The notes beneath the pieces were generated by a model. It was not told where the DNA came from. It searched no databases and was given only the letters and a program-made list of their open reading frames with translations. This document shows positions 2,094-61,117 of a stretch of DNA of 64,000 nt, piece by piece; the stretch's first letter is position 1; each line of letters starts with the position of its first letter. Location of the stretch: assembly GCA_028023455.1 (NCBI GenBank), contig JAQFVV010000005.1, positions 22,630,001-22,694,000 of the forward strand, read 5' to 3'. Position numbers and translations under genes: made by a program. The DNA comes from Epiperipatus broadwayi (Eukaryota > Animalia > Onychophora).

Positions 2094-2213
2094 TTTCAGT
2101 TGACTGCAATACTAAAATCTGCGAAAGTAATTCAAAATGTGAAATGATTGAAGGCAAGCCAGTCTGCATATGTAAAAGTGGTCTTGTTTATGATGATTCA
2201 GAAAAAGTCTGCA
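2094..2213 (+). CDS. Exon A, EGF-like domain (VSVDCNTKICESNSKCEMIEGKPVCICKSGLVYDDSEKVC)
   Basis: tttag| acceptor (alternative in-frame cag 6 nt downstream), |gtaagt donor, 120 bp, six Cys in EGF spacing. Confidence 0.9.
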
Positions 2214-23200: not shown

Positions 23201-26200
23201 CAAAACCTCTTTACAATAGGCATTGGAAAACATTGAAGTCAAGGAATATAGAGTTCCATGACTATTTTCTTGCAATTTGTTTGTTTTTTTTTAAATTTAG
23301 ACTGCAGTCCATTTCATAATCAATTAAGCTATTTAAACCAATAGTCTAAAAATTTTAATTATTGTAAGGTTATGACCCAAGCCATCACTTTGTCGATCTG
23401 CGTGGATGTGTTTGTTTCTACTGCCTTGCAAGCTTTGGTATAGTGACAGAGTGATAGTCTGGAATCCAAGGTCCATTGAACATGGCCTGTTTCTGTCACT
23501 TCTAGTACTCAAACTTCTTATAAACTCCTGAGCAGTAAAACATTAAATTATTATTTATTGTTTGTATAGTAATTCCTCCTGCTTAATGAAGGCCAACTTA
23601 TCAAGATACTAAGAATATTGACTGTACTGCCATTTAGTGATGATTTACTGTTTTTAAACACAAGTTGTGATGGAGGTATGACCACTGATTATTGCATAAG
23701 AAATAATCTGAGATGATTTAAACAACTTGTCAAGTTACCTTTTGCAATAATGACACAATTCTCTTTTTTATAATATAATACACCATATACACCTTAAATG
23801 ACACTTTACAGTGCAGTTTAACATATGATTCATTTTTATTTCCTTACAGTTTCAACTGTCCAGCAGTCATCATCAGAGCTACAATATTTAAACATATTTA
23901 AGTTAATAGTTGGAATGTTGTTTTTATTTTTGTATTTATATATATATTTGTATATGTATGTGTGTATATATATATATGAAAAACAAAAACCAAGTTTTAT
24001 ATACATAAACTTGCTATTGCTTGTATTTATGATCAATAGATGGAGCTTTACCAAGACCTCCAAACAAGCATATTTTTGTTTACATAAACGTCAGAGTCAG
24101 CATTCACTGTCTCTTTCATTGGCTCCACCCTCAGATCAGCTGATTTCAAGCTGATTTGCTATCATCAGTGAAGGATAGGAGTTAGAAACTAGACCTAAAC
24201 ACTAACTCCAAGCATTTATGCAACAAGTTTCTATCAGTTTGCAAGCACATATATATATATATATTGGTATATGTACAGATAGATATTAATTGTACATGTT
24301 TAAATGTTGTTGCTCTGATGATGACTGCTGGACAGTTGAAACTGTAAGGAAATAGAATAAATCATATGTTAAACTGCATTGTAAAGTGTCATTTAAGGTG
24401 TATATGGTGTATTATATTATATATAATTCAGCAATGCAAATAAGAAGTGGAAGGAAATTTTAATACTCTTTTTTCTAAAACAAACTGTTCTTTCAGAGGA
24501 CTACCACTTTGTATCCACTGATACACTCAATGCTTAAATTTTGATTTCTAGAATAAAGAGATAGAAATTACACTTATCTTATTTTGAGAGAAATAATTTG
24601 TGATATTTCATATTCGTATTTTATATTTTGATTACAATATTTTTTTTATATATTTCAGTAAAACATGATTGTTTTTAAGTTTCTTTTTTAAAAATAATGA
24701 AAACTGTCCCATATTTTAATTATTATTTTAGAGCTTTATTTTATTATGCTTTCCTTTATTTATAGGGACAGAAAGCTGTAGCGTACTACAATGTGGTATA
24801 CTTCAAACTTGTGATGTTTTAAATGGAAAAGCAGAATGCCGTGAGTAGATTGCAATTAATTTTGTTATTAAGATACATAATAAAGTTAAAAATAAATTAT
24901 TATTGAAATGTGATGTGGTATACTGTGGCTTCTTTTTTAAACGAATCAAAAATATCTCGGCAATTATGCCCAGATAAACCTGTTGGCCACTTTATTTTCC
25001 ATTCCGCACTCTAAATTTTCCCATATCTGCTCCATCCCATTTCCACAACATAATCTTTGTCAATTCTATGGCCTTTATATCTAAATTCCCCTTATCTTTT
25101 CCCAAACCCAGCATAAAAACCAATAATTCACTTTCTGTATAGTCACTTTTTTCATATTTATTCTTCCGTAACTTCATTATATATACTCTTTCTGTTTTCA
25201 AGCATTTACGTTCAATTAACAAATATAAAACCTATAAATAGTAGTGATCTCTATTGTCACATAAAGTGTATTATTTCATTATAATGATTGAATGGTCTTG
25301 AATAAAACAACCAAATCCTTAATTGTTATGTAATAAAATTATATAATGTTACATGGAAGATGTATATATAGCACTGAATATTACTGAATAGTTCTAGTCA
25401 TTTCTTATTGCTGATGTCTGATTGGGATTAGCTTTCTCTTTTTGATTCACAGAGGGGCAGAAACATCAAGTGATATGATCAGAAATATTTATTATGTACA
25501 ACAGATACAGTTAATAATATATAAATATAAGGCAAATTATAACTTTACCTAAGTTGTCTTCTGAAAAAGCGAGATTAATCCTACAGCATGTATAATTTTT
25601 TATTAGTCACAGAGAATACGTATTCATCCAAATTTTGTGAGCACTTGTGACTAACTAGTTTTTTTTTCTTTTCTTCTACGTAGTACTCTTTTATATGGGG
25701 TGAATTAAATCAGTCAATAGTGTTTACCTGTTACCAGTCGACTGCTCTTTAAGTATATCGCATACAGTAAATACTTGAGCATTCAGTTGGATCGTTGAAC
25801 ACCAGATAGCATTACTAACAGAAATATGATCATTTTCTGAGTCACCGATTTTCATTCAAGCATAAGGACTGTGTTGTACTATATCTGTTCAGATTTCTGT
25901 TGTCCAGCTTAAGTACATGCTTCCATTGTGGAGCACTGAAATCTGTTTATTAATTCTAGGATTACTTGACAAAAAGTGTATTATATTGACTACATCAATG
26001 CTCACTAGTGATGTTGTTAAAAATCCCAACAAACTAAAATTCTGACAGCTCAAAATGCCATTAGTTCAAAATTCTAACAGCAAAAATCAAAAGCTAAAAC
26101 TCCAACAGTGAAAAATCTTAACCGATCAAAATAGCAACAATCTAAAATTTTGAAAATGTCAACACATAAATAATTTGTTTTGTATCTATTAAGAATAACA

Positions 26201-29200: not shown

Positions 29201-32200
29201 TGCACACAATGAATCACTCATACTTACTGGCCTCTAATAGCCTACTTAATAAACTTTTTCGCAACTTAAGAATTACTACTTTCATTCTCTTCAGTCTTGC
29301 TTACATTAACTAATCAGTAATCTCATATCACAATGACTTCATTTGGTTTTTTGTATTTTTTTTTTACTCAATAATATATATGCTATAAAACTGATTATCG
29401 ATATGAATGTAACTATTCTTTATATTACTAAGACAGTATATCATTGCACATGTATGACAAGGTTTAATGTGTCATGTAAACTGTTTATTCATTCAAGAGT
29501 ATATTATCATCTACTAGAACCTATTTATAGATATCTTTAACATTTAATTTAATTTGGAAAATCATATGATCAAATGAACTAAGGGAGAAGGGATTTTTTT
29601 AGTAGCTCTGGGCTGACATTTTTATATTGATTCAAGTCTTTGGAAATAATAACAAACATTAACCCATTCTTAAATAAGACAAGAGCAGCTCTCTACTCTA
29701 GCATCTTCTTGGATAATCAGTGATTAGAGATGCACTTTTGTTAGATGCTTTGCTGTTATCACTTTTCATGAGAAACATTTTATTATTGTTATCCTTTTTA
29801 ATAAAAACATTATAATAAAGTAATAATAAATCTAAGACTTCAGTGTCTGTTAGAATATATAGCTTTTCCTCCAACTTTGTATTTTGTTTTAAACTCAGAA
29901 TTCCAGCAGTCAGCTCATTGGCCCAGAGTCTTCATGGGACTTAATCTCAAGATAAGAATGACTATCAATGCTTTGTGGAGCAATCATAGTGACATACCTA
30001 TAATCTGGGTTCAAATTCCAGCCCAATAAACTCAAACATTTTTTTGTAATGGCTTAAACATTTTTTTCAAATAGATAGTCTGTGGAATTCAGCTGACCAT
30101 CTTACATTGATAAGAAAATAAGTATCCAGCATTTTAAGCTAGAAGATAAAACAGGTATAATACTAAATTGTCCATTCACTTTATTACTGTTACATAATGC
30201 TTTATTTATCACCCTTTTTTACAGTTTCGATTGCCCCAGCAATCTTCTTCAGAACTTTATATCTCCTAGCAATACTTTATTTACCATCCTTTTTTTACAG
30301 TTTACAGTTTTGATTGCCCCAGCAATCTTTTTCACAACTTTATATCTTCTAATTGAGGCTTCAAGATATGAAGTTCTGAAGAAGATTGCTGGGGCAATCG
30401 AAACTGTAAAAAAGGGTGGTAACTAAAGCATTGTGTAACAGTAGTAAAGTGAATGGACAAGTTAGTATTATATGTATACATTTGGCAATGCAATAAGATA
30501 GAGTAGTTATTATGCTTCTTGAAGATAAAACTTTCAGCTCTAACTATTAGCAAGCTTGATGAGTATTGCATTCTTCACTGTTTCCATGTGAAGTGCTGAA
30601 AAGGCCTTTACTCTCTAGTTGCCTTATTTAAAGTTTGTTTTACCACTTACCTAACCATATTCCTATTTATTAACCAGTAATTGAATTATTTATGGGCCAA
30701 CTATATCAAAAAATTATATGGGTGCTAGGAAAATCTTTTTCATATCTAATAACTTTTTAAGCTTACCTGCATTTGAAGTCCATATCATGGATAACTGGTG
30801 AATAGATTAAGAAATAGACCCTTGAAACTTTCCACTGTATTATTCACCATTAATGGTTTATTGTTTGGGAATTCATAAGAAATTCAGGTACCAGAAGTGA
30901 TGGAATTGGAGCAGTGATTTCTTTGAGCTCCAGAATCTATTATTCTATTACTGCATTAAACTATGAGGCTTTAAATTATTTTATTATACAGTAATGATTA
31001 TTATTTTTTACAGCTTTATATAAGCAATGAAAAATTAATGAACATAAGATTACTTACTCCCAAATTGAGTTTAGTAGTGGTTATAAAATGGAGAAATTTA
31101 TGGATGATGAAGGATTACACCCTCCAATAATCTTTTCACTCCTATTAATCTGTTGAAGATAATAAATTAAAAATTTTGACATTTTATAAGCCATTTTGTG
31201 ATTTCCATAAAAATGTGATATTGAGGGGGAGGGGGTAAATGTTACCACTGTGTTCTTTATAACTAAAGCTATTTAAAATAATAATAAAAACTTTTTATAA
31301 TTAAATATTAAATTTGGAGGTATCATTTTAATCAGTTAAGTATTTATGTTTTCTATTTCAGTTTCTCCTCCAGAAGTTTGTAAAACAAAACAGTGTGGAA
31401 AGAATGCAAGTTGTGAAGTAAGAAATGGTTTAGCAGTATGTGTTTGCCTAGATGAATTCCAAGGCAATCCAGAAAAGGAATGCTGTAAGTATTATATATA
31501 CATGTTAATGTAATATTTTTAATGCACTAATAGGCGATAAATCATTTTAATCTATGGAAATTCAATTGTTAAAGTCTAGTTAAATTTTCAAGCTGCCAAC
31601 CAATCAAAATCTGCTTGGCAGTGATTGATTGTTGCCTTGGATGCATCACAGCTTGAAGATTTAACTATATTAACAGTTGCTATAAAATACATTGATATAC
31701 CAAATGTAACAGCACAAATGAATGTGAAATATTAAGCTAGTTAATCATAATAAAATATAATATCACATACATATTTTACAACTACCGATGATATATTAAA
31801 ATAAGCATTCTGTAATGTTTATAATTACTTTATCGCAATGTTATTTCAGAGTCATAATTACGTTTCCAGATATAATAATTGATGTACTGGGCACTATCTT
31901 CCGAAAGGAAAAGTTATTCTATTGAGATTATTTTAACCTTTCTGTATTTTTTTTAAATTCTTCTCTGTTGTTGCTTTTGGATTCTAACTAGCTCATGATT
32001 GCATATATTAATCTGTTCTGCGCTGACCTCTCGATTGCATACGCATTAATCTGTTCTTAATACATTAATTGCATGTCTAGGAGGAAAAACATTTGAACAT
32101 ATATGAGAAGAGAATAAATTGAGAATAAGTGGACTTAATAAATTAGCAACATATTTATTATTGTAAATGAAATAAAGAATTTGATATAACTACATCACAA

Positions 32201-35200
32201 TTATATAGATACACGTATGTACACTTGTGAAATATATATTTATCTGTTATTTAATTATTAGATCTATTTTACTTAACTTTTAATATTATCTACTAACTAT
32301 ATTGAGAAGTATTATTTTTTCTCATGTTTTTTTTTTTTAGAATAGCAATTATTAACTTATTAATTATTAACTTATTACATTCCTTAAGTGATAATATGAC
32401 AATTCCAAACATTTTAAATAATCAAAATACTGTATAAATAAATAATGTTTTTTAAAGGTAGTTGTAAAAGAGAGAGAAAACTACAAAAAAAAAAAACACA
32501 ATAAAGTAAATATTTTTTCCTCTTTCTTCAGTAATTTTATCTATCTATATGTTTACCAGGTTTTTTTTAAAAGGTATTAATAATTTTTTTAAAGAATGCT
32601 GATTTTAATTAATTAAAGTTGATTTTCTATCTCTCTCTAAAAATAAATGTAATGTTTTTGAAATTAAAGTATAATTAAAGGATTATCTGTTTCTAGTAAT
32701 TAAGAAAAAACAACTTCAGAGGAATTTTTCAATAATTAGGATATGATTGGAATTTTAATTAATTAAAAAAAAGAAGAAATAATCTTTTGTAAAGAAATGC
32801 CCAGTTGGTCAAATCATTTCTGAGGTAGTGTATGATTAGATGGATAAGGGGAGGCTGTATTAAAATAAGATAAGGGGATGTTAAAAGGATTGATTTCAGT
32901 GTCTAGTTAGTGTCAGTCTTGGTCCAGGTATTGAGAAGAGAAGAGCAGTGGTAGTTACAATTCAGCTATTGAGAAGACATCAGTAGTAGCAATTTAATTG
33001 TGAAGAGAACTGAAAAGTTAAATTTGTAGTCTGAAATAGTTGGTGCTAGACTGGAATATTGCTTTTGTTTATAACAGTCTATTATACATCAATTTAGTTT
33101 TCCAATATGTTATTTAATCTTATTTTAAGCTGAGACTATTATAATAATAAGCTAATAACTTGTTACTTGAATTTTTATAAGATGTTCAGATAATGAAAGT
33201 GATAGAATTGAACTGTAATCCATGAATTTTTAGTTGTTGAGTCCATCATTATATTAACTCTTATAGGGTACTGAGCTTATTTATAAAGCATTATTCTTAT
33301 TTAAAGAATATTGGGGTTTTAAATATATATATAAATTTATTTACAGAACCTTTAAAAATATATGATTTGTGGTGAAAGAAAATAAGTTATTATTGTCTAA
33401 TTTCTTATTTTTAATTTTTGCTGCATGTTCTCTGTGTTACACAATGTATGCTATAATGAAATCACTTTCAGTCATTGAAAAGAAGAGTCATATTCTACTT
33501 TTATGTTTTTATATTTTTTAAATGATTTTTAGATGATTTTATTAATCGATACTTTGTAAAATATATCTTTTTATAATATTTCTGTTTTTTTAATAGTTTA
33601 ATTTTTAAATTATCACTTGTCTTTAAAAATTGAAACAGTTTGATTATAATCATGCATTTAATATCTGTGCAGTTTAGCACAGTGGTGAAGTGAGAGGTTG
33701 TTATGTATTCAAATGCAGGTACTCAGACTAACGACAAATAAGTCAATAAATAATCAATTTTGATACAGACTGAAATAATGTTGAAATGTTATTAATAGTG
33801 AATAGTTATTGACACACTCCAACACAGTATATATAATTCACTTGTGGTTCAATTCCCAGGACAAACAGCTTGCTGCTTGCTGGATGGTTTCCTTTGACCT
33901 CAGTTTCTAAAACATTTTGGCTCCACTCCTCAAACTAACAGATTTCTTTGACTCTGTTCAGTTGCTGCTCACGATCACATTGGCTTCCCATTGGAGCACT
34001 ACACTGTCACTTAAGCTTCTTGCAGCTATTGTCCATTAAAATCTCTTGCCAACAGTTCACTTGATAAAGTCACTGAAATAAGAACGACACTTTGCTGTAC
34101 CAGCTATCCCCCCCTCCCCAGTTTGGCCTCCAGCAATCCAATATTTGTCCTTGATTGTTATCAGCTTTGTTTTATCTTTGCATTTTTAATTGGTAAGTTT
34201 AACTTCTAGTGAATCAAGAAATATTTGTAATTAGCAAATATTTCTTAGCTTTTACCAAACGCAATTTTCTTATCACAAATACATAAATATTTTCTATTGT
34301 TAAATTCTATGCAAGTTTAATCATTAATTAAACCCTTAGCAGTTAGGGATCTAAAAAAAATATGTTTCTCTAATATATTTCCCTTTTTTTTTTCTGGAGT
34401 CAAAAAACTTATTATTGAATTTTTACATACATATTTTACAAACATGACAGAGGTAAAGATTATTTTTATTGTCTAATGTCATATGACCTTCTGAGCAACT
34501 AATCAATCAATTATTTATTATGCTTTTAAACCTAATAAGTTCTACGTGTACATTTGATTATTTCATATATTGAGATTAATGATCTTTTTTTCTAGATCAA
34601 AAATAAAACTCCTTAAAATTAGAGATTATACATATGTATTATTTTATAAACTTAATTATTTGTTTTGTATTACAGCACGTCAATCTACAAATTGTCAGAC
34701 TTTGCATTGTGGAAAGTTTTCTAAATGTGAAATTAAAAATGGTTTAGCAGTCTGTGTCTGTCCACCAGGATTCCAAGGGATACCAGAAGAAGAATGCTGT
34801 AAGTTCGCATTATTCTTTTTTTGTATATATTTTTATTTAATATACCGGTTGGTTTTTTTTGCCTGTCTTATGAAATCTTGTAACTCAATTTTCACCCACT
34901 TTGTAATCTAGTTTAATCTTTGCATATGTATATATTTCTGAAGATAGTATGTTGTTTTGGAGTTTGTAAGCAATTCTAGCAAAACAAATTCAATGAAAAA
35001 TTTATATTTTAATTAAATTGTATTTAGAACTATAGAAAACTAAAAAATAGAAAATAAAAAAATATAAAAATTTTAAAGAAATGCTTTTATTTTTAAAATG
35101 CACTAAAAGATTTTAAAATGTAAAAAATAAATTTTCTTTTGCATTCACTATATTCTTGACAATGTGCTATTAAAATAAAAGAATTTGGTGCTCTTATTTA

Positions 35201-38200
35201 AAAATATATTTAGATTATTTTTGAATATGAGTATTACATGCTTTTATTTTGGTCACATAATATCCAAAATACTCTGAAAGCCAAAGAAAATATATTTTTT
35301 AGTGCATTTATGAGAATAAAAACTTTTTTAAAAGTTTTATTTAAAAAATACATATAAATACATAAATAAATTAAAATAAACGCAGACTATGAGTTCAGAA
35401 GAAATGCAAAGAAATTAAAAACAAGGAATAGGAATTTGCTTAAGTATTCTAGCTAAACAGTAGAAATTTCTGTATAGAAAAACTTATGTATTTGTTCTTA
35501 TAATCCATTACTTTTATAATGATATGTTTTCCAAAGGTTCAGCAAATGATTAAACAAAAAAAAATATTTTTTCTTTCTTAATGATTAAGGTCCTATTTAC
35601 ATATAATATTTTACCTTGTATGCACAGTGGTGAGGTGATGGATATGGAAACTGAAAGTTCCATGATCAAAGTTTAATCTGTGTCTTCAGTATTTAAACAT
35701 CGTTTGACATGCCAAATAACTAACTACAATTATTTACCTTATATGATTTGGACCAGCAGTAGTTTAATCAACTTAAGAGCTAAGAAATTCCTGAATCAAA
35801 GCTCAGATTATTGCTGGCACTAAAATGTTACATGACCTCCTAAACAATTAATTAGCTTTAGTCAAAACATGCTATTTTACATTTAGTAATTTTTTCTCCA
35901 GTTACAGAAATTATCATTAGGGTCATCTGTCTTTCAACTTCAAAAAGCATCAATGAAAACAGTAAAATCAATAATTGCTAGGAAGGAGTGCAACTTCCCT
36001 ATCAGAATGCCATAATTAGAATCAAACCATAAGACTTTGGCTGTTCTGTCCAGTGACATTAATCATGACTTTTGATGAAAGTTTCTGCGTTTTTAATATT
36101 TGTTGGTTGAAATTAATTAACATAATTTATTTTTATATAAAATAAATATAATTTATTTTTATAAAATAGAAAAATTGTTTTTGATTTGGCTGTTTATTTT
36201 TTTAAAAAAAAAAAATGTTTTAGTCTTAATGAAATCTTTTTTAAGACTTATTTTTGGTAGGATTTAAAAAGTTTCTATTTTAATTAAAAATTTAAATAGG
36301 TCAAAGTCACATGATAGGTTAGAGCCGATCAGAATTAACTTGATTGAAATTGTAATAAATAAGATAATCAGAAATGCTTACAACAATATATATATATATT
36401 TATTGTGAAATTGAAGCAATTTTTGTTTACATGAACTTAAATATGTATATTAACTATGTGTTTGAAAAATATATACTAAGGCATATAGTAAATTTACTGT
36501 ATTTTATTATTCAACATTTATAATAGAGTTTATATATACAATAGTTTAAGTTCATTATTTTACTGTGATCGGTAAATCTATCATTATTCAACTTTAATTT
36601 ATATAACATTTATACAACTTACTGCAGACATGGGCATTGGTCAATAGAAGAAGCCATTCATTGGTTTTCTGGATACTTTATTTCTAGAGTACAACCTAAT
36701 ATTATTTTATTTGTATTCACATGAGTGCTTTGTTGGCACAGGAATGATTGTTCTGGATATATGGTAAATAACTAAACATCACATGATCACTATCTCTTAT
36801 ACTAGCACATAATTGTTATTAAACAAGGCAAAGCTCTCCATACAGTAATGCCACCCTGTGAACTGAGTTCAGACCCATATATGACTATATAAGCTATTGA
36901 GCTTAGATTGAAAATATTATTGTGTTTTCAATTTCATTCTCATAGTTTTGTAGTTAAGCAGAGATAAAAGGTGGCTGCTGGAGGGTTGCATTAGATCCTA
37001 AGATCTAGGTGCAGTTCTCTCAGATCCAAGGCTTCTCACTGATGAAAGCCACAAGCCAGAAACTAGTCTGGGGATATTGGATGAGTAGTCACTAGATAGG
37101 GATTTTATGCACAAGCCTTCTGGCATCCATTGATTACTCTGGTTGGCACAGGGTGACACTACTGTATGGAGAGTTTTGCTTTGTTTAATATATGGTAAAT
37201 ATAGTCTTTCATATTAAAATGGATTCTGCATCATTATTTATGGTTGGTTTATTTTTAGCTTTATTCTAGAATTGGTTAAGTGGTTTGATTAAAAGTTTCA
37301 TTTTTTTTCAGTCCGTTTTTTCAGCTGGACTTTAATTTGATAATTCTAATCAATACGTTTCCTTATGAGTATCTCTTTTAAAAAATGTATCATTGATAAA
37401 AATGATATTTAATAGTGATCAGATGAAATAAATTACATCAAGTTAAATATTTAGAATTGATACCAATCACTCAGCTCATGCTAGAATTATGGCACCTATC
37501 AATTATTTTATTCAAAATTGCTACAAAAGTAGGATTTTTGTTGCTTTGAGTTTTTCAAAGGCATTCTCTTTCTCTTTCACTATGGCTATGCTACTTAATG
37601 TAAATTTTATAAACTAATAAATGCCAAATGATATTACTTATTAAATCCCTATCCAGTGTTGTCCTATCCATTCAGACTAGTTTCTAGCTTTTGGCTTTGA
37701 TCAGTGAAGAGCTGTTCCAAGATCCATAGCTCTTAATTGGTGAAAGCCATAAACTGGAAACTAATCTGAGGATATTGGATAGGTCAGAACTGGAAAAGGG
37801 GCTTTAAGCATTATGAGCTGTCATCTATTAGTTACTAAAGCTTACATTAAGTAGCATAGCAGTGATGAGAAAAACTATGCTGCTACATAGTAATGTTGAA
37901 AGCTGGAATCATGTGATAGTCATGTGATACTTTGAGTTTTTTAACATAAATCTATTATTATATATTATTTTTATAATAATTCCTTTAAAATTTGTTATTT
38001 TCACTAGGGACTGAAGATTGTAATGTTCTTCATTGTAATAAAATCGAAAAATGTGAAGTTGTAAATGGTAAGGCAGAATGCAAAAAATGTGAAGATGGGT
38101 ACCGAATTAATAAGGATAATGAATGTGGTAAGTAGAGTGATGATGATAATTATTTATATTGTTCACAAATATAAGATATTATTGCATTTTTTTTTTTATT

Positions 38201-47200: not shown

Positions 47201-50200
47201 TAAACCATACAGATTATATTATATATATAAGAAATGTTATACATGGAAATTGTTAAGTTTATATTGTAACAGGAGGGTTACAATATTTACACAAATAACT
47301 TTACCAGTTTAATCATATAATGAGAATGTTGTTTTGGTAGAAATTGCAAATATTTTATTTTGTGTTGTTGTGTTCTGTAATTGTCTATTTTTTTATATAT
47401 ACTTCTTTTTATTGGTTTTATATATACAGTAAGAAATTGAAACTTTAGTGTTATTTGTGAATATATTTTTTTATTTATAAATATAATATCACATGCTTTT
47501 ATTTTAGTTGCTGCATCGTGTAGAGTTCTGTCATGCCCAACTCCCTCCACATGTAGAATACAAAATGGATTTGCTGTGTGTGTGTGTCCTTCAAGTTTAA
47601 TGATTTTTGATTCAGACTCACGCATTTGTAAATGCCCTAAAGATATGACCTATTACCCTCAAACAAGAGAATGCAAATGTCCAAAGGATATGACATATTT
47701 TCCAAACACAAAAGAGTGCAAATGTCCAAAAGATATGACTTATTATCCAGAAACAAAAGAATGTAAATGTCCAAAAGATATGACCTACTATCCAGAAACT
47801 AAAGAGTGTAAATGTCCAATAGACATGACATATTACCCAGATACAAAAGAATGTAAATGTTCAAATGGTATGCCATACAATCCTGAAACAAAACAATGTA
47901 AGTGTCCAAAAGATATGACTTATTATCCAGATACAAAGGAGTGTAAATGTCCAAAGGATATGACCTACTACCCAGATACAAAAGAATGTAAATGTCCAAA
48001 AGATATGACCTACTATCCAGAAACTAAAGAGTGTAAATGTCCAATAGACATGACATATTACCCAGATACAAAAGAATGTAAATGTTCAAATGGTATGCCA
48101 TATAATCCTGAAACAAAAGAATGTAAGTGTCCAAAAGATATGACTTATTATCCAGATACAAAGGAGTGTAAATGTCCAAAGGATATGGCCTACTACCCAG
48201 ATACAAAAGAATGTAAATGCCCAAAAGATATGACCTATTATCCAAAAACAAAAGAGTGTAAATGTCCGAAGGATATGGTCTATTATCCAGATACAAAAGA
48301 GTGTAAATGTCCAAAGGATATGATTTATTATCCAAACACAAAAGAGTGTAAATGTCCAAAAGATATGACATATTTTCCAGACACAAAAGAGTGTAAATGT
48401 CCAAAGGATATGACCTATTATCCAGATACAAAAGAGTGTAGATGTCCAAAGGATATGATATATTATCCAGACACTAAAGAGTGTAAATGTCCAAAGGATA
48501 TGACATATTATCCAGACACAAAAGAATGCAAATGTCCAAAGGATATGACCTATTATCCAGATACAAAAGAATGTAAATGTCCAAAGGATATGACCTATTA
48601 TCCAGATACAAAAGAATGTAAATGTCCAAAGGATATGACTTACTATCCAGACACAAAAGAATGTAAATGTCCAAAGGATATGTCATATTATCCAGATACA
48701 AAAGAGTGTAAATGTCCAAATGGAATGCCATACAATCCTGAAACAAAAGAATGTGGGTGTCCCAAAGATATGGCATATGACACCCAAACAAAGGAGTGTA
48801 AATGTCCCAAAGACATGTTATTTGATATAGAAACAAAAGAATGCAAATGTCCCAAAGATATGGCATATTATCCTCAAACAAAAGAATGTAAATGTCCTAA
48901 AGATATGATTTATGATACCCAAAAGAAAGAGTGCTTATGTCCTAAAGATATGATGTATGATTCTCAAAGAAAACAGTGTAGATGCACCAAAGATATGATA
49001 TATGATTATAGGACAAAAGAATGTAAATGCCCTAAAGACATGATTTATGATTCTAACTCTAAGGAATGTAAATGTCCTAATGAAATGATGGTTTATATGA
49101 ATAAAGAATGCAAATGTCCTCAGAATATGATTTACGATTCTAAATCTAAAGAATGTAAATGTCCCCACGAAATGATGGTTTACATAAACAAAGAATGCAA
49201 ATGTCCTGAAAATATGATTTATGATTCTAAATCTAAAGAATGTAAATGTCCCCATGAAATGATGGTTTATGTAAACAAAGAATGCAGATGTCCTGAAAAT
49301 ATGATTTATGATTCTAATTCTAAGGAATGCAAATGTCCTCATGAACGAATGGGTTACGTAAACAAAGAATGCAAGTGTCCTGAGAATATGATCTACGATT
49401 CTAATTCTAAAACATGCAAGTGTCCACATGAGATGATGGTTTATGTAAACAAAGAATGCAAATGTCCCGAAAATATGTTTTTTGATGCCGAAGCTAATGA
49501 CTGCAAAAAGTGTCCAGAAGATATGAGTTTTGATGTCAACAGTAAAACGTGTAGTAAGTGAACATGTGATCAAACATTAATTCCCATTAACTGAGTTGGA
49601 TTATGCATGAGTGCTCATTAAATTAAGGGATGAAATTGCCTTGGGCTTGGTTAATCTTTGGAATTGTTAATTTGTGGAATTTAATTCAGAGTATAGATTT
49701 TTTACCACTTACTGAATTTTTAACATATGTAAAATTATTAATGTTATATAGAGGGATTAAAAGTGTGCCATGTATGTGTAATTATTTCTGTGTAATTATT
49801 ATAAATTTTAGTGTCTTAAATTTATCACAGAAATGTTTTTAATCATACTGTTTTTAGTTTTTAAAAAAAAAACTTTAATTTTAATATATGAAAATGAATT
49901 CAGTAAATAATGCTTTGCTTATTCATTCAATAACATGTACACACTTAATTATATAATCAGGAGTTTTACTATTGATAAATACTTTTTAAAATAATGGATA
50001 TCCATTAGAAATCAAAGTGTAATACAATTTTATTTTTTTCTGTGTTGAAATATTTTATATAAAGTTATTAAACTTATTTTAAACGCACATTATTATATTA
50101 AGTAATATTTACTAAGGCTGTAACCTCAGGAATATGCATTTGAAAAATGTGAAAGTAGGGACCTCTACAGGTCTTAACCACAAGCTTACGCCTTGGAAGA

Positions 50201-53200: not shown

Positions 53201-54756
53201 AAATTTGTTGGAATAATTAATTACTCATTTACCAATTAGTATTGGATGATACATTGAGTTGGTATGGGCAAGCTATTTGAAAAAAATAATATTTGTTTGG
53301 AAAATTCTCAATTATTTGAAAAAATATCCAAATTCTTATCCTTAAACTATAAAATTGTATACTTTTGATTTTCATATATATATATTGTATATATAAATAT
53401 ACTTACAATATAACTAGTAAAATATATTAATGCTTCGCTACTAATTTATTTATTGTTTTGTCAGACATTAGAATTGCTCCTGATTTCATTTTTTTATATC
53501 AGTAAGTGGTAAAAATTATATCTCTTTTTTTTTCACTAATCATAAAATGAAGGATTGTATACTTAACCCTTTTACATATTTACGATTATATATTTCTTAT
53601 ACGTTTGTAACTCATATTTGTAGTTAAAGTGACATGTCAAACTAAGATTTGTGGTAAAGATGCAAAATGTGAAGACATTCATGGAGAAGCTATGTGTGGT
53701 AAGTAAATTAATATTGTTGTCATTCTTAAGATTAAATTTTAAAAATCAGGTTTATTAGAAAATTGATGATAAATGTTGTATTGGAGAATACAAAAACAAT
53801 TGTGATTACAATAATGTCTCCACATAATTCTATGGAACCATTATTTTAAGCATTTAAAGAGAATTCCCATTATCTTGCACTTCAACTCCAAATATAATTG
53901 AAGCATGATATTCTATATTTTTAAGAGCAGAAGACTTAATATATTAATAATGATTCAGTATTGAAGAGATATTTTTATTTTTTTGTCTTGACTTTTGGAT
54001 CAATATAACAGTGCAATTTATTATTATAATGTGATATTGTTGGCTTATGCATATAATATGCATGTTTAAAAGCATGATTTTTGCATCCTGCTAATAATTT
54101 AAAGCAGCAACATTTATTTTTACCAAAGAAGCTTTTTAGATAAAGATCAACTAAAGGCTTATTGATTGTAGGGGTATAGCATGACCTCATCTCTCCTCAC
54201 AAATTGTAATGGCTGCAATATATTTACAATTATTTGTTTTTACAATCACTATAGCAACTTGCCAACAAAGTCAGACTAACTTTTAGGTAAATAATAGCCA
54301 ACTATTTATCGGCAATGTGTACAGCGAGTTAAGTTGGCTACTTAATTCATTTGGTTATCACTAAATAAGTATGTTAGTAAACGTTAGATAATCATATACT
54401 AAATATCTTGATAACATCCTCAACTGGCATTTTATAAAGTATAAGTAGATAATAAAATTCTTAGTCCTTCAGATTATAGTAAATATAGATGTCACCATTG
54501 TGTATAATATAAGTGGTCTGAGGTAGCAATCTTATGTTTTTTATTGTATATATTAGGACTTATTAAGCATGCACACTCATGTAAAGATAGATTTAACTTC
54601 ATGTTTACATATTTTATAATTTTTTTTTTATAGTTAGTCCTTGTACTGAAGGCAATAACCCATGTGATAAGTCCGCAAAGTGTCGTCATCTTGAAAATAA
54701 TAAATTGGAATGTGTTTGCGAAGATGGAAAAATTGTAGGACAAAAAGAACCATGTC
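2094..54756 (+). CDS. Multi-exon gene (partial, both ends outside window) encoding an EGF/FOLN-like multidomain, cysteine-rich protein with a long CxCP repeat array; 11 exons, about 3174 coding bp, about 1058 aa
   Basis: Exons 2094-2213, 10450-10578, 14762-14878, 21410-21532, 24766-24840, 31362-31484, 34676-34798, 38008-38127, 47508-49553, 53624-53698, 54634-54756. Each has a pyrimidine-rich AG acceptor and GT donor, a length divisible by 3 and phase 1 at both ends. Junction codons (I,V,V,W,L,S,W,V,I,V) give no stops. Cys spacing is EGF-like. Confidence 0.9.
2501..2654. repeat. Fragment of the GAAACTAGTC foldback family
   Basis: Matches 17710-17780 and the reverse complement of 37090-37185; ends gatcatgtgatgttt. 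Confidence 0.7.
4001..4091 (+). mobile_element. tRNA-derived (Gly-like) SINE, copy 1
   Basis: GCGTTGGTGGTCGAGTGG (A box) ... GGTTCACTTCCCGGCCAATGC (B box); 7-bp acceptor-like stem; same family as 46000 and 50468. Confidence 0.75.
5016..5596. mobile_element. Non-autonomous hAT (Blackjack/MER81-like) MITE
   Basis: TIR tagggtgaccaga / tctggtcatcata, subterminal cgggac motifs, 8-bp TSD gctaaggc (5008-5015, 5597-5604). Confidence 0.85.
6509..9757 (+). mobile_element. Near full-length degenerate RTE LINE (APE + RT)
   Basis: ORF pieces VMGDLNARIG, GSDNRLVRCK, SVRQGDSISP, HLDFADDIV, YKYLG; tga/atg-like tail; candidate 10-bp TSD aatcaatatg at 6499-6508 and 9758-9767; about 3.25 kb. Confidence 0.88.
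10450..10578 (+). CDS. Exon B, EGF-like/Cys-rich module (SASCRMIKCGRSEECIEKDGRALCIPICDKNQIVNSEGKCET)
   Basis: tttag| acceptor, g|gtatta donor, 129 bp, six Cys. Confidence 0.85.
11333..11644 (+). mobile_element. Chimeric small element: hammerhead-bearing hairpin-family fragment fused to the 3' end of the RTEX-like LINE, bounded by short inverted repeats
   Basis: 11420-11550 matches the family at 37020-37160; 11551-11635 is the reverse complement of the LINE 3' end at 43470-43552; inverted termini ttaaaacagta / tactgttttaa. Confidence 0.65.
11432..11471 (+). ncRNA. Minimal type I hammerhead-like motif
   Basis: attca CTGATGA aagccataagcca GAAACTAGTC tgagt: stem I attca/tgagt, palindromic stem III ACTAGT, GUC site; stem II imperfect. 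Confidence 0.55.
12408..13101. mobile_element. 694-bp foldback element with 152-bp TIRs, TG...CA ends and 5-bp TSD (unclassified)
   Basis: Arms 12408-12559 and 12950-13101 differ at only one position seen; TSD cttgt at 12403-12407 and 13102-13106. Confidence 0.85.
13712..14336. repeat. Partial tandem duplication (339-bp period) of a dispersed repeat also present at about 15945-16145 and, inverted, at 27685-28095
   Basis: taaatgag...tgaatgacgcct repeated at 13712 and 14051; shared aatgaatccacctattc and ttaagtactggaaatgagag blocks. Confidence 0.8.
14762..14878 (+). CDS. Exon C, EGF-like domain (SGSCTKNNPCHKTARCEEENGPKCFCEDREVAFGEQCA)
   Basis: ttttatag| acceptor, g|gtactt donor, 117 bp, six Cys. 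Confidence 0.88.
17676..17842. repeat. Collapsed near-perfect hairpin of the hammerhead-associated foldback family
   Basis: About 55-bp arms caaaactctcc...aatgga / tccagtg...gagttttg around an 8-nt loop ttctggca. Confidence 0.8.
18299..19650 (-). mobile_element. RTEX-like LINE, 5'-truncated copy
   Basis: LLFDDIFLC RT motif; C-terminal region GCELIYDN.KESSLLFKA; (catca)-like 3' tail. Confidence 0.8.
19805..21170 (-). mobile_element. RTEX-like LINE, 5'-truncated copy
   Basis: ORF 20360-21001 (post-RT region, SFYMRDAKSKMKM); tail tgtgatgtg on + strand at 19808. Confidence 0.8.
21410..21532 (+). CDS. Exon D, EGF-like domain (IPSVSCQMKNCGKNAKCELQNGLAICICPSGFQGTPEEEC)
   Basis: ttttttcaaacag| acceptor, |gtaagt donor, 123 bp; paralogous to exons F and G. 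Confidence 0.92.
22495..23034. mobile_element. Non-autonomous hAT (Buster/Charlie-like) MITE
   Basis: TIR [ca]gtgatcttcaacc / ggttgaagaccactg; 8-bp NNNTANNN TSD atctatta (22487-22494, 23035-23042); subterminal ggtccgc-like motifs. Confidence 0.82.
23769..24421. mobile_element. Penelope-like inverted pLTR foldback with hammerhead-like motifs
   Basis: About 126-bp arms 23769-23895 / 24296-24421, each with CTGATGA-t-gactg-ctgga-cagtt-GAAACTGTA and a downstream aataaa. Confidence 0.75.
24128..24174 (-). ncRNA. Type I hammerhead ribozyme candidate
   Basis: Minus strand ccttca CTGATGA tagc aaatca gctt GAA ATCAGCTGAT C tgaggg: 6-bp stem I, 3-bp stem II plus a U.U closing pair, palindromic stem III, AUC site. 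Confidence 0.65.
24766..24840 (+). CDS. Exon E, four-Cys FOLN-like half-EGF module (TESCSVLQCGILQTCDVLNGKAEC)
   Basis: tttatttatag| acceptor, |gtgagt donor, 75 bp; similar to the N-terminal part of exon H. Confidence 0.85.
24908..25225 (-). mobile_element. RTEX-like LINE 3' fragment
   Basis: ORF 24992-25222 matches the C-terminus of ORF 43521-44339 (YTESELLVFMLGLGK). Confidence 0.8.
26885..27514 (-). mobile_element. Solo LTR (630 bp)
   Basis: TGTTAT...ATAACA termini, 5-bp TSD cctat (26880-26884, 27515-27519), minus-strand TATA-like ctataaata. Confidence 0.8.
27685..28095. repeat. Copy of the 13.7-kb repeat family with a terminal about 50-bp foldback (27685-27807)
   Basis: tgtaaataaacatt...ttaatcag / ctgattaa...gtttatttaca; the remainder is the reverse complement of 13760-14050-type sequence. 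Confidence 0.7.
30156..30472. mobile_element. Penelope-like pLTR foldback: two inverted copies plus one forward copy of a hammerhead-like unit
   Basis: Forward CTGAAGA-a-gattgc-tggg-gcaatc-GAAACTGTA at 30376-30408 (6-bp stem II); reverse-complement copies at about 30221-30255 and about 30300-30335; arms extend to tataatactaa / ttagtattata. Confidence 0.75.
31362..31484 (+). CDS. Exon F, EGF-like domain (SPPEVCKTKQCGKNASCEVRNGLAVCVCLDEFQGNPEKEC)
   Basis: ttttctatttcag| acceptor, |gtaagt donor, 123 bp. Confidence 0.92.
33699..34449. mobile_element. Possible solo LTR
   Basis: TGTTATG...CATGACA with flanking gaggt direct repeat (33694-33698, 34450-34454). The right third is AT-rich and unlike the rest, so the boundary is uncertain. 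Confidence 0.4.
34676..34798 (+). CDS. Exon G, EGF-like domain (RQSTNCQTLHCGKFSKCEIKNGLAVCVCPPGFQGIPEEEC)
   Basis: ttttgtattacag| acceptor, |gtaagt donor, 123 bp; also inside ORF 34570-34911. Confidence 0.92.
36771..37187. mobile_element. Foldback retroelement (Penelope-pLTR-like) with hammerhead-like motif and 14-bp TSD
   Basis: TSD atatatggtaaata (36757-36770, 37188-37201); inverted arms aaagctctccatacagta / tactgtatggagagttttg; motif ttctca CTGATGA...GAAACTAGTC tgggga at 37033-37074. Confidence 0.75.
37643..37783. repeat. Degenerate head-to-head pair of the GAAACTAGTC hammerhead-family unit
   Basis: cagactagtttctagc...atcagtgaag followed by gtgaaagccataaactggaaactaatctgaggatattggatagg. 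Confidence 0.6.
38008..38127 (+). CDS. Exon H, EGF-like domain (TEDCNVLHCNKIEKCEVVNGKAECKKCEDGYRINKDNEC)
   Basis: ttattttcactag| acceptor, |gtaagt donor, 120 bp. Confidence 0.9.
38528..39617 (+). mobile_element. 5'-truncated RTE LINE (RT and C-terminus), same family as 6509-9757
   Basis: ORFs 38421-38864 (GVRQGDSISPKLF, HLDFTDDVV) and 38877-39569 (LKWSWAGHIARR); (gat)n tail; 3' end plus flank duplicated at 39573-39681. Confidence 0.9.
39700..42420 (-). mobile_element. RTEX-like LINE with SGNH esterase ORF1, APE and RT (3'-truncated, degenerate)
   Basis: Minus strand VCFPGARIRDV, MVGANNL, DRLHLAKQG (esterase blocks); IGYLNMQG, ILAVVETYL (APE); QGFRSDR, FIDIEKAYD, LLFADDIFL (RT). Confidence 0.8.
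42421..43458 (-). mobile_element. RTEX-like LINE 3' fragment
   Basis: ORF 43144-43386 AIQGEMGWLSF; tail gtgcatcacatgacatc. Confidence 0.82.
43459..44410 (-). mobile_element. RTEX-like LINE 3' fragment with an intact 272-aa C-terminal ORF (CCHC knuckle CKLC..E...HLLLQC)
   Basis: ORF 43521-44339; (acatc)4 tail at 43459-43478. Confidence 0.85.
46000..46099 (-). mobile_element. tRNA-derived SINE, copy 2
   Basis: Reverse complement of the 4001 family with an A-rich tail; 13-bp TSD taattttaacaat (45987-45999, 46100-46112). Confidence 0.85.
46190..46820 (+). mobile_element. Older degenerate RTE LINE 3' fragment
   Basis: ORF 46220-46441 (IINANGNI..KINSRIKFG); gaccttcttcctgcagt...gatgatg tail. Confidence 0.75.
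47508..49553 (+). CDS. Exon I, 2046 bp: EGF-like N-terminus followed by about 43 tandem Cys repeats (CKCPKDMTYYPDTKE, then alternating 14/15-aa units); reminiscent of Balbiani ring 3-type CxC repeats
   Basis: ttttattttag| acceptor in frame with the 661-aa ORF 47576-49561; donor tgt a|gtaagt at 49553/4. Units differ at many synonymous positions while Cys, Pro and Met are conserved. Confidence 0.93.
50133..50292. repeat. 160-bp near-perfect palindrome (about 76-bp arms, 8-nt loop)
   Basis: tatgcatttgaaaaatg...gaaaagaggg aaacccta ccctcttttc...caaatgcata, two mismatches seen; same family as 55830. Confidence 0.9.
50468..50572 (+). mobile_element. tRNA-derived SINE, copy 3
   Basis: GCATTGGTGGT...TCCCGGCCGATGC, poly(A) tail, 15-bp TSD aaatcattaacttat (50453-50467, 50573-50587). 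Confidence 0.88.
51896..52365. repeat. Foldback element with about 210-bp arms
   Basis: Arms 51896-52106 / 52159-52365; 12-bp direct repeat ttaaccaaatgt at 51853-51864 and 52361-52372. Confidence 0.85.
53624..53698 (+). CDS. Exon J, four-Cys FOLN-like module (KVTCQTKICGKDAKCEDIHGEAMC)
   Basis: atttgtag| acceptor, g|gtaagt donor, 75 bp; similar to the first half of exon A. Confidence 0.88.
54634..54756 (+). CDS. Exon K, EGF-like domain (SPCTEGNNPCDKSAKCRHLENNKLECVCEDGKIVGQKEPC)
   Basis: poly-T tatag| acceptor, |gtaagt donor, 123 bp; similar to exon C. Confidence 0.9.
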
Positions 54757-55970: not shown

Positions 55971-56024
55971 GTAAATATTACTACGTAATCAATGTGCATT
56001 TAATAAATTTATAATTATAATATC

Positions 56025-56265
56025 TTATATAAATCCAATTTATCCAAATCACTTTGTACACTTTTTAGCAAAAACCTTTTATTGTACATATACACACAAA
56101 CACCTATGTTCCAACTGTCCTGCAACCTTCACTTTACTTTAATCTAAACTGGCTCTGAAGAAGACCGCAGGACAGTCAAAATGTAGGTGTATGTGTATAT
56201 ATGTACAATAAAGGGTTTTTGCTAAAAAGTGTTCAAAGTGATTTGGATAAATTGGATTTATATAA
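56025..56265. mobile_element. Penelope-like inverted pLTR foldback with a degenerate hammerhead core
   Basis: Arms 56025-56123 / 56167-56265; CTGAAGA-a-gaccg-cagga-cagtc-aaaa at 56155; aataaa in the arm. Confidence 0.7.
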
Positions 56266-57293: not shown

Positions 57294-57305
57294 AGAAAAA
57301 GATAG

Positions 57306-61098: not shown

Positions 61099-61117
61099 AT
61101 AATTTAAAGTTGTTTGA

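What the first reader, a model, noticed from the sequence alone, without database searches (positions are those of the whole stretch)
47508..49553. Giant exon in which the last disulfide loop of an EGF domain appears polymerised about 43 times
Seen: the exon opens as a normal EGF-like module (C-4-C-5-C-8-C-1-C) and then repeats C-P-x11-C-K about 43 times instead of closing once. The loop has the same spacing as the C5-C6 loop of exon A (CKSGLVYDDSEKVC). Synonymous sites vary between units while C, P, M and aromatic residues stay fixed, which points to protein-level selection. Established: CxC-spaced Cys arrays occur in Balbiani ring protein 3 (Chironomus silk) and the VEGF-C tail. Inference: a rod-like chain of mini disulfide hairpins embedded in an EGF protein may be an undescribed secreted structural, adhesive or matrix protein family.
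Basis: partly seen in the sequence, partly recalled or inferred. Interest (0 to 1): 0.8.

Follow-up and report, generated by a model that had tools for sequence, protein, structure and literature searches.

The report
EGF hairpin polymer exon, giant matrix gene
One 2-kb exon of a very large EGF-repeat matrix gene encodes 44 back-to-back copies of the last disulfide loop of an EGF domain; it is spliced into mRNA and kept by selection, and is most likely a stiff disulfide-stapled spacer in a Dumpy-like surface-matrix fibre.

Summary
Window 47508-49553 (+) is a phase 1-1 exon of 2046 nt. It opens as an EGF module (Cys gaps 4-5-8-1) and continues with 44 disulfide-size loops (C-x11-13-C) separated by one residue. 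The core is 32 units of 15 aa, CKCPKDMTYYPDTKE.

- Transcription: RNA-derived contigs join it to the EGF exons at 38127 and 53624, and none cover the introns.
- Selection: pN/pS among units is 0.18. Between taxa, synonymous changes dominate and every change in a Cys codon is silent.
- Origin: the unit matches the C4-x-C5...C6 part of the gene's other EGF modules beyond the cysteines.
- Structure: AlphaFold gives an EGF fold followed by one beta-hairpin per unit (pLDDT 78).
- Context: the gene spans more than 250 kb, with over 40 single-EGF exons. Splice-compatible cuticlin/ZP-N exons lie downstream, so the architecture is Dumpy/FBN-1-like. It has no DPY modules.
- Copies: a 25-unit paralogous exon lies 9.8 Mb away.
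- Relatives: in 1.8 billion representative proteins the best hits are 27-34% identical CxC-loop arrays of protists, all uncharacterised.

Verdict: this is a real new variant of a known kind, an EGF-derived module array in an apical-matrix giant. It is not a new protein family. The disulfide pairing, tissue and function are inferred. The scan had already noted the paralogous exon and the upstream EGF array on other DNA.

The parts
47508..49553 (+). Giant phase 1-1 coding exon (2046 nt, 682 codons, 92 Cys, about 80.6 kDa).
   Evidence: Open frame and splice sites. RNA contig coverage starts and stops at its ends. Composition.
47508..47626 (+). Complete EGF-like head: C1-C4 with gaps 4-5-8, then C5 and a first 13-residue loop closed by the first Cys of the array.
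   Evidence: The AlphaFold head matches thrombomodulin EGF at Z 3.6, rmsd 2.0 A over 39 residues.
47627..49066 (+). 32 tandem 45-nt units, consensus CKCPKDMTYYPDTKE. Units 4-8 are duplicated as units 9-13, a 225-nt higher-order repeat.
49067..49456 (+). Nine units alternating 14 and 15 aa (CKCPHEMMVYVNKE / CKCPENMIYDSKSKE), period 87 nt.
49457..49553 (+). Last two loops. The second follows CKKC instead of CKC, and the final Cys closes loop 44.
47506..47507 (+). Acceptor AG after a T-rich tract.
   Evidence: Contig X5 record 16 joins 38127 to 47508.
49554..49559 (+). Donor GTAAGT.
   Evidence: Contigs X1 record 5 and X5 record 22 leave the genome here and continue in the exon at 53624.
38008..38127 (+). 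Upstream EGF exon spliced to the giant exon.
53624..53698 (+). Downstream 75-nt half-EGF exon (C1-C4 only) spliced to the giant exon.
54634..54756 (+). Next full EGF exon, phase 1-1.
34676..34798 (+). EGF exon, phase 1-1.
31362..31484 (+). EGF exon, phase 1-1.
24766..24840 (+). Second 75-nt half-EGF exon (C1-C4 only).
21410..21532 (+). EGF exon, phase 1-1.
14762..14878 (+). EGF exon, phase 1-1.
2100..2213 (+).

Best explanation
The exon is a genuine, expressed coding exon of a giant modular extracellular-matrix gene.

The gene has more than 40 one-EGF-per-exon modules spread over more than 250 kb. It most likely ends in a cuticlin-type ZP domain, which is the Dumpy/FBN-1 kind of apical-matrix fibre protein.

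The exon arose by tandem amplification of a 45-nt segment encoding the C-terminal subdomain of the gene's own EGF module (C4-x-C5, loop, C6). It is still remodelled by unequal crossing-over.

Because the C6 of one unit doubles as the 'C4-position' Cys of the next, every unit is expected to close one C5-C6-type disulfide. On that reading the chain is 44 consecutive 11-13-residue disulfide-stapled beta-hairpins joined by a single Lys. That would be a protease- and stretch-resistant rod or spacer, a few tens of nanometres long, inserted in the EGF fibre. Its surface would be conserved and rich in Tyr, Lys, Asp and Thr.

Shown: the exon is real, spliced, under purifying selection, derived from the EGF C-terminal part, and duplicated as a paralog.

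Inferred: the disulfide pairing, the rod shape, continuity with the ZP exons, and a mechanical or spacer role in an apical matrix.
For: - Open frame of 706 codons against a mean of 12.9.
- Phase 1-1 splice sites.
- Contigs from four coded runs cover the exon but not the flanking introns. They join 38127 to 47508 and 49553 to 53624.
- pN/pS among units is 0.18.
- In a relative's contigs, 16 codons changed synonymously and 10 non-synonymously. All 5 changes in Cys codons were silent.
- The unit HMM aligns from C4 in 29 of 43 other EGF modules of the locus. 24 of 43 exceed the 95th percentile of controls with fixed Cys and shuffled residues.
- The 92 Cys allow complete pairing as C1-C3, C2-C4 plus 44 loops.
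- The AlphaFold2 model has mean pLDDT 77.6: an EGF-like head, then two short strands per 15-aa unit around the P-D-T-K turn. The head superposes on thrombomodulin EGF.
- The locus holds EGF exons from -92 kb to +146 kb.
- CUT_N (ZP-N) exons lie at +153 kb and +160.8 kb. The first scores 34 bits against a cut-off of 27, and their phases match the EGF donors.
- A paralogous exon of 25 units has the same phases. Its residues are gene-specific, and 32 of 37 units are nearest to a unit of their own gene.
- The contigs also carry in-frame skips of one unit (45 nt) and of a 14+15-aa unit pair (87 nt).
Against: - No disulfide map or coordinates were available, so the pairing rests on homology and secondary structure alone.
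- The alignment used for AlphaFold was built from the protein's own repeats plus the paralog.
- No solved or predicted structure matches the array convincingly: Foldseek gave nothing at E <= 1e-3, the best VIA Z was 3.8, and the best Atlas TM was 0.52.
- Continuity of the transcript with the ZP exons was not seen.
- The gene's ends were not reached.
- No DPY modules are present, so it is not a straightforward dumpy orthologue.
- Tissue and organism are unknown. The runs are coded, and their 'RNA' label is a guess supported only by the spliced joints.
Confidence: 0.6

Rival explanations
1. The array is mainly a chemical cross-linking or adhesive surface, not a passive rod. Its 9% Tyr and 16% Lys would serve dityrosine, quinone or DOPA tanning. 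The protein would then be an abundant secreted material such as glue, an egg-case or silk-like coat, or sclerotised cuticle, as in mussel foot EGF proteins or octopus octovafibrin.
For: - Composition is K 16%, Y 9%, P 11%.
- Y9 is fixed in 31 of 32 units.
- Contig depth is very high in one run: X5 depths reach the thousands.
- EGF spacing 4-5-8 matches octovafibrin (PMC10336842).
- The model weakly matches mussel Pvfp-5b at Z 2.3.
Against: - Contig depth is not a measure of expression (caveat).
- No tissue information is available.
- No C-type lectin ends or other material-protein hallmarks were seen.
- The ZP-N exons point to an anchored apical matrix, not a secreted bulk material.
Confidence: 0.15
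2. The cysteines pair differently: either as a ladder between neighbouring units or intermolecularly. The array would then be a covalent polymerisation zipper and not a chain of independent EGF-type hairpins.
For: - CxC motifs in Chironomus Sp185 are predicted to bridge successive modules (PMC12723725).
- No structural template constrains the pairing here.
Against: - The head is a normal EGF whose C5 needs the next Cys as its C6.
- The unit aligns residue by residue with the C5-C6 loop of sister EGFs.
- AlphaFold puts the loop in a hairpin closed at its base.
Confidence: 0.12
3. It is a runaway, essentially neutral repeat expansion tolerated inside a huge modular gene. The symmetric exon could be skipped, and it would have no function of its own.
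For: - The exon is phase 1-1, so skipping keeps the frame.
- Unit number appears variable, with 45- and 87-nt skips in contigs.
- There is a recent 5-unit duplication.
Against: - pN/pS is 0.18, and Cys and Met are invariant across 32 units.
- Changes between taxa are biased towards synonymous ones.
- A diverged paralog keeps the same design with 25 units.
- Contigs show the exon included.
Confidence: 0.08
4. The array is a chitin-binding region, a degenerate peritrophin-A/CBM_14-like repeat that ties the fibre to chitinous cuticle.
For: - The tail (49022-49552) sums to 32 bits for CBM_14 against a cut-off of 22.1.
- Atlas feature and shape neighbours include CBM_14 clusters.
Against: - No single stretch passes. 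Only profile positions 30-49 of 53 are matched, repeatedly.
- The six-Cys CBM_14 pattern is absent.
- The core units give only E 0.23.
Confidence: 0.05

Closest known systems
Drosophila Dumpy (giant EGF-DPY-ZP apical-matrix protein); C. elegans FBN-1 is a looser analogue, cited from my own knowledge
   Same: - A huge gene made of many EGF modules of the C-x4-C-G-x-N-A-x-C...C-x-C-x-x-G-x-x-G-[DN]-P-x3-C type.
- One very large exon holds about 40 tandem, near-identical repeats evolving by unequal crossing-over, as with PIGSFEAST in Dumpy (PMC2930355).
- A ZP-type domain lies downstream.
   Different: - No DPY module (Cx5Cx5Cx4C) occurs in 264 kb.
- The big repeat exon encodes Cys hairpins, not the Cys-free 102-aa PIGSFEAST unit.
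- Neither a transmembrane segment nor continuity with the ZP exons was shown.
Canonical EGF-like domain, C-terminal subdomain (C5-C6 minor hairpin)
   Same: The unit keeps C4-x-C5, Pro after C5, the aromatic position and the closing Cys. It aligns to that part of sister EGFs and is modelled as a two-stranded hairpin.
   Different: It occurs 44 times without the N-terminal two-disulfide subdomain. Each Cys of the CxC pair serves two neighbouring loops.
Truncated-EGF / two-disulfide tandem modules: avian CREMP, the Dumpy DPY module, Chironomus Sp185 (PMC12723725)
   Same: These are structural proteins built from long tandem arrays of tiny disulfide-stapled hairpin modules, extended with few inter-module contacts. 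This gene also has 75-nt exons encoding only the C1-C4 half of EGF.
   Different: Those modules carry two disulfides each and correspond to the N-terminal EGF half. Here the unit has one disulfide and corresponds to the C-terminal half.
Octovafibrin (octopus egg tether, 29 EGF repeats; PMC10336842)
   Same: EGF modules with 4-5-8-1 Cys spacing form a load-bearing fibre. The disulfides hide length and add toughness.
   Different: Octovafibrin has an 8-residue C5-C6 loop, C-type lectin ends, no hairpin array and no ZP domain. No sequence relationship was tested here.
CxC-loop arrays catalogued as DUF4813 / DUF5874, and unnamed proteins of Hexamita, a chytrid, Marteilia and environmental eukaryotes
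   Same: They have a repeating C-x-C-P-x(10-13) pattern, sometimes after EGF_3/cEGF modules (P0003, P0011).
   Different: They are only 27-34% identical, with variable unit lengths. They come from unrelated taxa and none is characterised. The DUF4813 match covers only profile positions 19-86 of 291, and the paralog falls below the cut-off.
Furin-like / TNFR / Eph-receptor cysteine-rich domains
   Same: They are rods made of stacked small disulfide-closed hairpins. The model matches RANK and TNFR1 CRDs and the EphA2 CRD weakly (Z 2.1-2.7).
   Different: Those modules have mixed one- and two-disulfide types with different spacings. The Z-scores are at noise level.

Membership tests
EGF-like domain (head of the exon) | Six Cys with gaps near 4-5-8-1-(8-13) and an EGF fold. 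| tested here: met
   Gaps are 4,5,8,1,13. Model residues 3-44 superpose on thrombomodulin EGF at Z 3.6, rmsd 2.0 A over 39 residues. Pfam EGF profiles are only weak on this head (E 0.16-0.6), whereas sister exons hit EGF_3/EGF at E 4e-6 to 2e-4.
EGF-like domain (repeat units) | The unit is homologous to the C4-x-C5...C6 segment. | tested here: met
   The unit HMM aligns from C4 in 29/43 sister EGFs. 24/43 score above the 95th percentile of Cys-fixed shuffles.
EGF-like domain (repeat units) | C5-C6 disulfide within each loop. | not testable with these tools
   Only secondary structure and pLDDT are returned. No coordinates and no chemistry are available.
Dumpy (Drosophila dp) orthologue | EGF-DPY-EGF triads, i.e. 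DPY modules Cx5Cx5Cx4C. | tested here: not met
   No DPY pattern on the + strand of 264 kb. Relaxed spacing finds only EGF variants and noise.
Dumpy (Drosophila dp) orthologue | C-terminal ZP domain in the same protein. | tested here: inconclusive
   CUT_N exons lie at +153 kb (34.1 bits, cut-off 27) and +160.8 kb (profile 78-103). Their phases are compatible with the EGF donors. No transcript links them, and ZP-C was not reached.
Dumpy (Drosophila dp) orthologue | Transmembrane anchor after the ZP domain. | not tested
Pfam DUF4813 (PF16072) | A match over the 291-position profile above the gathering score. | tested here: inconclusive
   The whole-exon score is 75 bits (cut-off 27.6), but it is made of 6 stretches that all fall in profile positions 19-86. 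The paralog scores 17.5 bits, below the cut-off.
CXCXC repeat (PF03128; VEGF-C tail, Balbiani ring 3) | The CxCxC motif and a Pfam match. | tested here: not met
   No CXCXC hit at E <= 1. The motif here is CxC followed by 11-13 residues.
CBM_14 / peritrophin-A | A six-Cys, ~53-residue domain matched end to end. | tested here: not met
   Only a summed score, from repeated partial matches to profile 30-49/53, with no stretch passing on its own.
Octovafibrin-type egg-tether protein | EGF array flanked by C-type lectin domains, with an 8-residue C5-C6 loop. | tested here: not met
   C5-C6 loops here are 11-13 residues. No lectin exon was noticed among the long open stretches of 264 kb, though that list was not scanned with lectin profiles.

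The most novel reading that the evidence does not exclude
The C-terminal single-disulfide hairpin of EGF is an autonomously folding module that evolution has polymerised into a length-tunable, disulfide-stapled nanorod. The same gene also uses the N-terminal EGF half alone, in its 75-nt exons. That would show that the two EGF subdomains are separable building blocks. It would also define a new matrix module class whose copy number (44 here, 25 in the paralog, variable between taxa) sets a mechanical or spacing parameter of an arthropod-type apical matrix fibre.
Probability: 0.3. Interest if true: 0.65.

Novelty: new variant of a known kind. Interest (0 to 1): 0.5.

Why it matters
EGF is one of the commonest extracellular modules and is usually treated as an indivisible six-Cys unit.

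This gene contains the C-terminal loop polymerised 44 times. It also contains exons encoding only the N-terminal half. Both are natural evidence that the two subdomains can be used separately.

If the predicted chain of stapled hairpins is real, it offers a simple, sequence-defined rod whose length is set by repeat number. That is of interest for matrix mechanics: hidden length, toughness, and the way Dumpy-like fibres resist tension. It is also of interest for protein-material design.

It also gives an independent parallel to the concerted evolution of the PIGSFEAST exon of Drosophila dumpy.

Tried and rejected
- **Word-index protein search of the exon.** It found only two weak hits. The length filter excludes the full-length host protein, so that blank means little.
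- **Exhaustive HMMER search.** There is no close orthologue. The best hit is E 1e-32 at 27-34% identity, and the hits come from protists, a chytrid and unnamed assemblies.
- **NCBIfam and PDB sequence searches.** Nothing was found.
- **DUF4813 and Zona_pellucida profile searches of the whole genome.** The first look found no DUF4813 candidates and no ZP hit near the locus. Both are uninformative because exons are short and only 20 candidates are scored.
- **Organism identification.** A LINE reverse-transcriptase ORF was used as query. Other agents' notes call the genome arthropod-type with chelicerate-like synteny; I did not test this.
- **Search for a separate exon supplying C5-C6 to the two half-EGF exons.** None was found, so they probably splice straight to the next EGF.
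- **Cryptic GT/AG sites inside the units.** Joining them would create TAA stops. The 45- and 87-nt skips in contigs have non-GT..AG ends, so they are copy-number differences or assembly collapse, not splicing.
- **EOGT O-GlcNAc site.** Thr8 sits at the offset of the acceptor in C5-X-X-G-X-T/S-G-X-X-C6 (PMC3650022), but the Gly residues are missing, so no claim is made.
- **Long antisense ORFs over the repeat.** These are a mechanical by-product of the repeat.
- **Not run.** The second structure job and complex prediction would not have resolved the disulfide pairing.
Full report
**1. The observation**

Translating from window position 47507 gives an open frame of 706 codons. In this 29%-GC window the mean open stretch over all six frames is 12.9 codons. 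The next longest is 295 codons and belongs to a transposon.

A T-rich tract and AG at 47506-47507 precede 47508, and GTAAGT follows 49553. Both junctions split a codon after its first base, so the exon is 2046 nt and phase 1-1.

The protein opens as VAASCRVLSCPTPSTCRIQNGFAVCVC. That gives Cys gaps of 4, 5, 8 and 1, the pattern of an EGF module. After that, the gaps run 13, then 43 times '1 followed by 11 or 12', with one CKKC near the end. In total there are 92 cysteines and 44 loops.

- Units 1-32 are exactly 15 aa, with consensus CKCPKDMTYYPDTKE.
- Units 33-41 alternate between 14 and 15 aa.
- Tandem Repeats Finder reports period 45, 31.5 copies and score 1558, plus a period-87 tail.

So the count of 'about 43' is right; by my count it is 44 loops.

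**2. It is coding and under selection**

Across the 32 equal-length units, C1, C3 and M7 never change. Y9 is kept in 31 of 32 units, P4 in 29 and P11 in 26, while third codon positions vary freely. The pooled Nei-Gojobori values are pS 0.65 and pN 0.12, a ratio of 0.18. For the 25 most similar units the ratio is 0.14. Units 4-8 are repeated almost exactly as units 9-13, which marks a recent 225-nt duplication.

**3. It is in spliced RNA**

Ten public runs from four studies hold parts of the exon. I laid the contigs of four of them on 46800-50300. The results were:

- Coverage begins in the bin containing 47508 and ends in the bin containing 49553. The flanking introns are bare apart from two short transposon-like patches.
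- A 1157-nt contig (X5 record 16) leaves the genome at 47507. Its adjoining 30 letters have a single best match in the window, at 38097-38126. That is the end of the EGF exon 38008-38127, with 4 mismatches and no other site within 7 mismatches.
- Contigs X1 record 5 (2467 nt) and X5 record 22 (3744 nt) leave the genome at the donor. They continue with a sequence found only at 53628-53657 in 264 kb, with 1 mismatch. That site is a 75-nt exon at 53624-53698.

Introns of 9.4 kb and 4.1 kb are therefore removed, so these runs are RNA even though their records do not say so. The transcript runs on for at least 3.6 kb downstream.

The runs carry several coded organism labels:

- Run X1 has 43 contigs at 99% identity or more. 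It is probably the same species as the window.
- Run X5 is mostly 95-99% identical.
- Run X9 is mostly 90-95% identical.

In X5, 16 codons changed synonymously against 10 non-synonymously, and all five changes in Cys codons were silent. Two in-frame skips, of 45 nt and 87 nt, have non-splice ends. They look like differences in unit number or collapsed assembly.

**4. Where the unit comes from**

The window and 100 kb on each side carry EGF-like exons on the + strand from -92 kb to +146 kb. Forty-three of them match a full six-Cys pattern. Those whose boundaries I examined are phase 1-1 and 114-123 nt long. In the window these are 2100-2213, 14762-14878, 21410-21532, 31362-31484, 34676-34798, 38008-38127 and 54634-54756. 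Several hit Pfam EGF_3/EGF.

Their second halves read like CVCPVEMTGNPDEEC or CICPDGMAGNPDEEC. These can be set beside the unit plus its closing Cys, CKCPKDMTYYPDTKEC.

I built an HMM from the 32 units and ran it against the 43 sister EGFs:

- It aligns from its first position to the C4 position in 29 of the 43.
- It runs through 'CxCPxxMxxxPD' in most of the upstream array.
- 24 of the 43 score above the 95th percentile of controls in which the cysteines were fixed and all other residues shuffled.

The unit is therefore the C4-x-C5, loop, C6 part of this gene's own EGF module.

Two 75-nt exons (24766-24840 and 53624-53698) encode only C1-C4. I found no separate exon that could supply their C5-C6. 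The gene therefore seems to use the N-terminal EGF half alone as well. That recalls the two-disulfide CREMP and DPY modules discussed in PMC12723725.

**5. Predicted structure**

AlphaFold2 was run on the head plus eight units. The alignment was built from other stretches of the same array and from the paralog. The model has mean pLDDT 77.6, with no residue below 50.

It shows the major EGF hairpin at residues 15-19 and 22-26. After that there is one pair of three-residue strands per 15-aa unit. In unit 1 these are T-Y-Y and E-C-K, on either side of the P-x-T-K/R turn (consensus P-D-T-K).

Residues 1-44 superpose on solved EGF domains, for example thrombomodulin at Z 3.6, rmsd 2.0 A over 39 residues. 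The array itself has no convincing match:

- Foldseek found nothing at E <= 1e-3.
- VIA gave Z 2-3 to TNFR/RANK cysteine-rich domains and to hairpin solenoids.
- The best Atlas match was TM 0.52, to an unnamed cluster.

By homology each loop should be closed by a C5-C6-type bond, from the second Cys of one CxC to the first Cys of the next. With 92 Cys this leaves none unpaired. This pairing is an inference. I had no coordinates and no chemistry to test it.

**6. The host gene**

At +153.07 to +153.25 kb an exon matches the cuticlin N-terminal (ZP-N) domain: CUT_N at E 3.9e-8, 34 bits against a cut-off of 27, profile positions 5-64. At +160.76 kb a second exon matches profile positions 78-103.

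The first of these has a phase-1 acceptor that fits the EGF donors. The pair is joined in phase 0.

An EGF array followed by a ZP domain is the architecture of Drosophila Dumpy (PMC2930355, PMC3650022). From my own knowledge it is also that of C. elegans FBN-1. Dumpy likewise has one huge exon of about 40 near-identical tandem repeats (PIGSFEAST) that evolves by unequal crossing-over (PMC2930355).

However, no DPY module (Cx5Cx5Cx4C) occurs anywhere in the 264 kb. I therefore do not call this gene a dumpy orthologue.

**7. Relatives**

A second exon of the same design lies 9.8 Mb away on the same contig. It has the same phases and 25 units, and its first 161 residues are 66% identical in protein.

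Its units carry gene-specific residues. N replaces D at position 6, which creates N-M-T sequons, and N replaces K at position 14. Of the 37 units compared, 32 are closest to a unit of their own gene. That fits concerted evolution, or separate expansion after duplication.

Outside this genome, HMMER read all 1.84 billion representative proteins and found 237 hits. The best was E 1e-32 at 27-34% identity. The named ones are uncharacterised proteins of Hexamita, a chytrid and Marteilia. Some place similar C-x-C-P-x(10-13) arrays after EGF modules.

Pfam gives DUF4813 at 75 bits, but only against profile positions 19-86 of 291, and the paralog falls below the cut-off. The CBM_14 score in the tail is a sum of partial matches.

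**8. Interpretation**

The best-supported reading is a disulfide-stapled hairpin rod or spacer built into a Dumpy-like apical-matrix fibre.

It is about 80.6 kDa with pI 7.6. Its composition is K 16%, C 13.5%, P 11% and Y 9%, and it has no N-glycosylation sequons.

Octopus octovafibrin shows that EGF disulfides can give a fibre stiffness, toughness and hidden length (PMC10336842). A chain of minimal loops would be an extreme form of that design.

The rivals are a cross-linking or adhesive surface, a different disulfide topology, a neutral expansion, and chitin binding. None is excluded, but each has less support.

**9. Verdict**

It is a new variant of a known kind: an EGF-derived module array inside a known type of giant matrix gene. 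It is not a new protein family.

The scan had already flagged the paralogous exon (s1-086677) and the upstream EGF-exon array of the same gene (s1-086240, s1-087304) on other DNA.

Noticed in passing
window 24766-24840 and 53624-53698 (+): Two 75-nt phase 1-1 exons encode only the first four cysteines of an EGF module (C-x4-C-x5-C-x8-C). No nearby exon supplies C5-C6. They may be natural two-disulfide 'half-EGF' modules like CREMP.
   Followed up: partly
L015:9072-9253 and L016:6759-6886 (window +153.07 to +153.25 kb and +160.76 to +160.89 kb): Two exons together match the cuticlin N-terminal (ZP-N) domain. Their phases are compatible with the EGF donors, which suggests the EGF array ends in a ZP domain.
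   Followed up: partly
L002:883-2100 (-), G000:C5:12.82 Mb: A paralogous giant exon with 25 units. Most of its units carry N-M-T glycosylation sequons where this exon has D-M-T.
   Followed up: partly
window 38394-39566 (+) and 39984-44339 (-): LINE-type reverse-transcriptase and endonuclease ORF fragments fill the 9.4-kb intron before the giant exon. The best database relatives are unnamed or contaminant sequences.
   Followed up: partly
window 56000-62000, e.g. 57924-58214 (-): A block richer in GC (35-39%) contains a retroviral-type integrase-like ORF. It is probably an LTR retrotransposon in the intron.
   Followed up: no
window 47034-47150 and 50076-50300: Short intronic patches are covered at high depth by contigs of several runs, with loose ends on both sides. 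These are transcribed or abundant repeat elements, not exons of this gene.
   Followed up: no
window 10347-10601 (+): An EGF-like open stretch has an unusual C-I-P-I-C in place of C-x-C (ASCRMIKCGRSEECIEKDGRALCIPICDKNQIVNSEGKCE). Its exon borders were not worked out.
   Followed up: no
window 53624 and 53649: The RNA contigs of both X1 and X5 differ from the window at the first base of the exon (G for T) and at 53649 (C for T). This is an allele or assembly difference at a splice acceptor-adjacent base.
   Followed up: partly
window +98342 to +98575 and +125235 to +125543 (L-loci downstream): Two short Cys motifs, CPENE-x-[ML]K-x(7-8)-C-[DE]-C-x-x-G[FY]VRE-x(3-4)-C, differ from the standard EGF exons. 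They may be another module type in the same gene.
   Followed up: no
window 47637-49573 (-): Several long antisense ORFs (up to 212 aa) overlie the repeat. They are a by-product of the periodic sequence and not evidence of a gene.
   Followed up: yes
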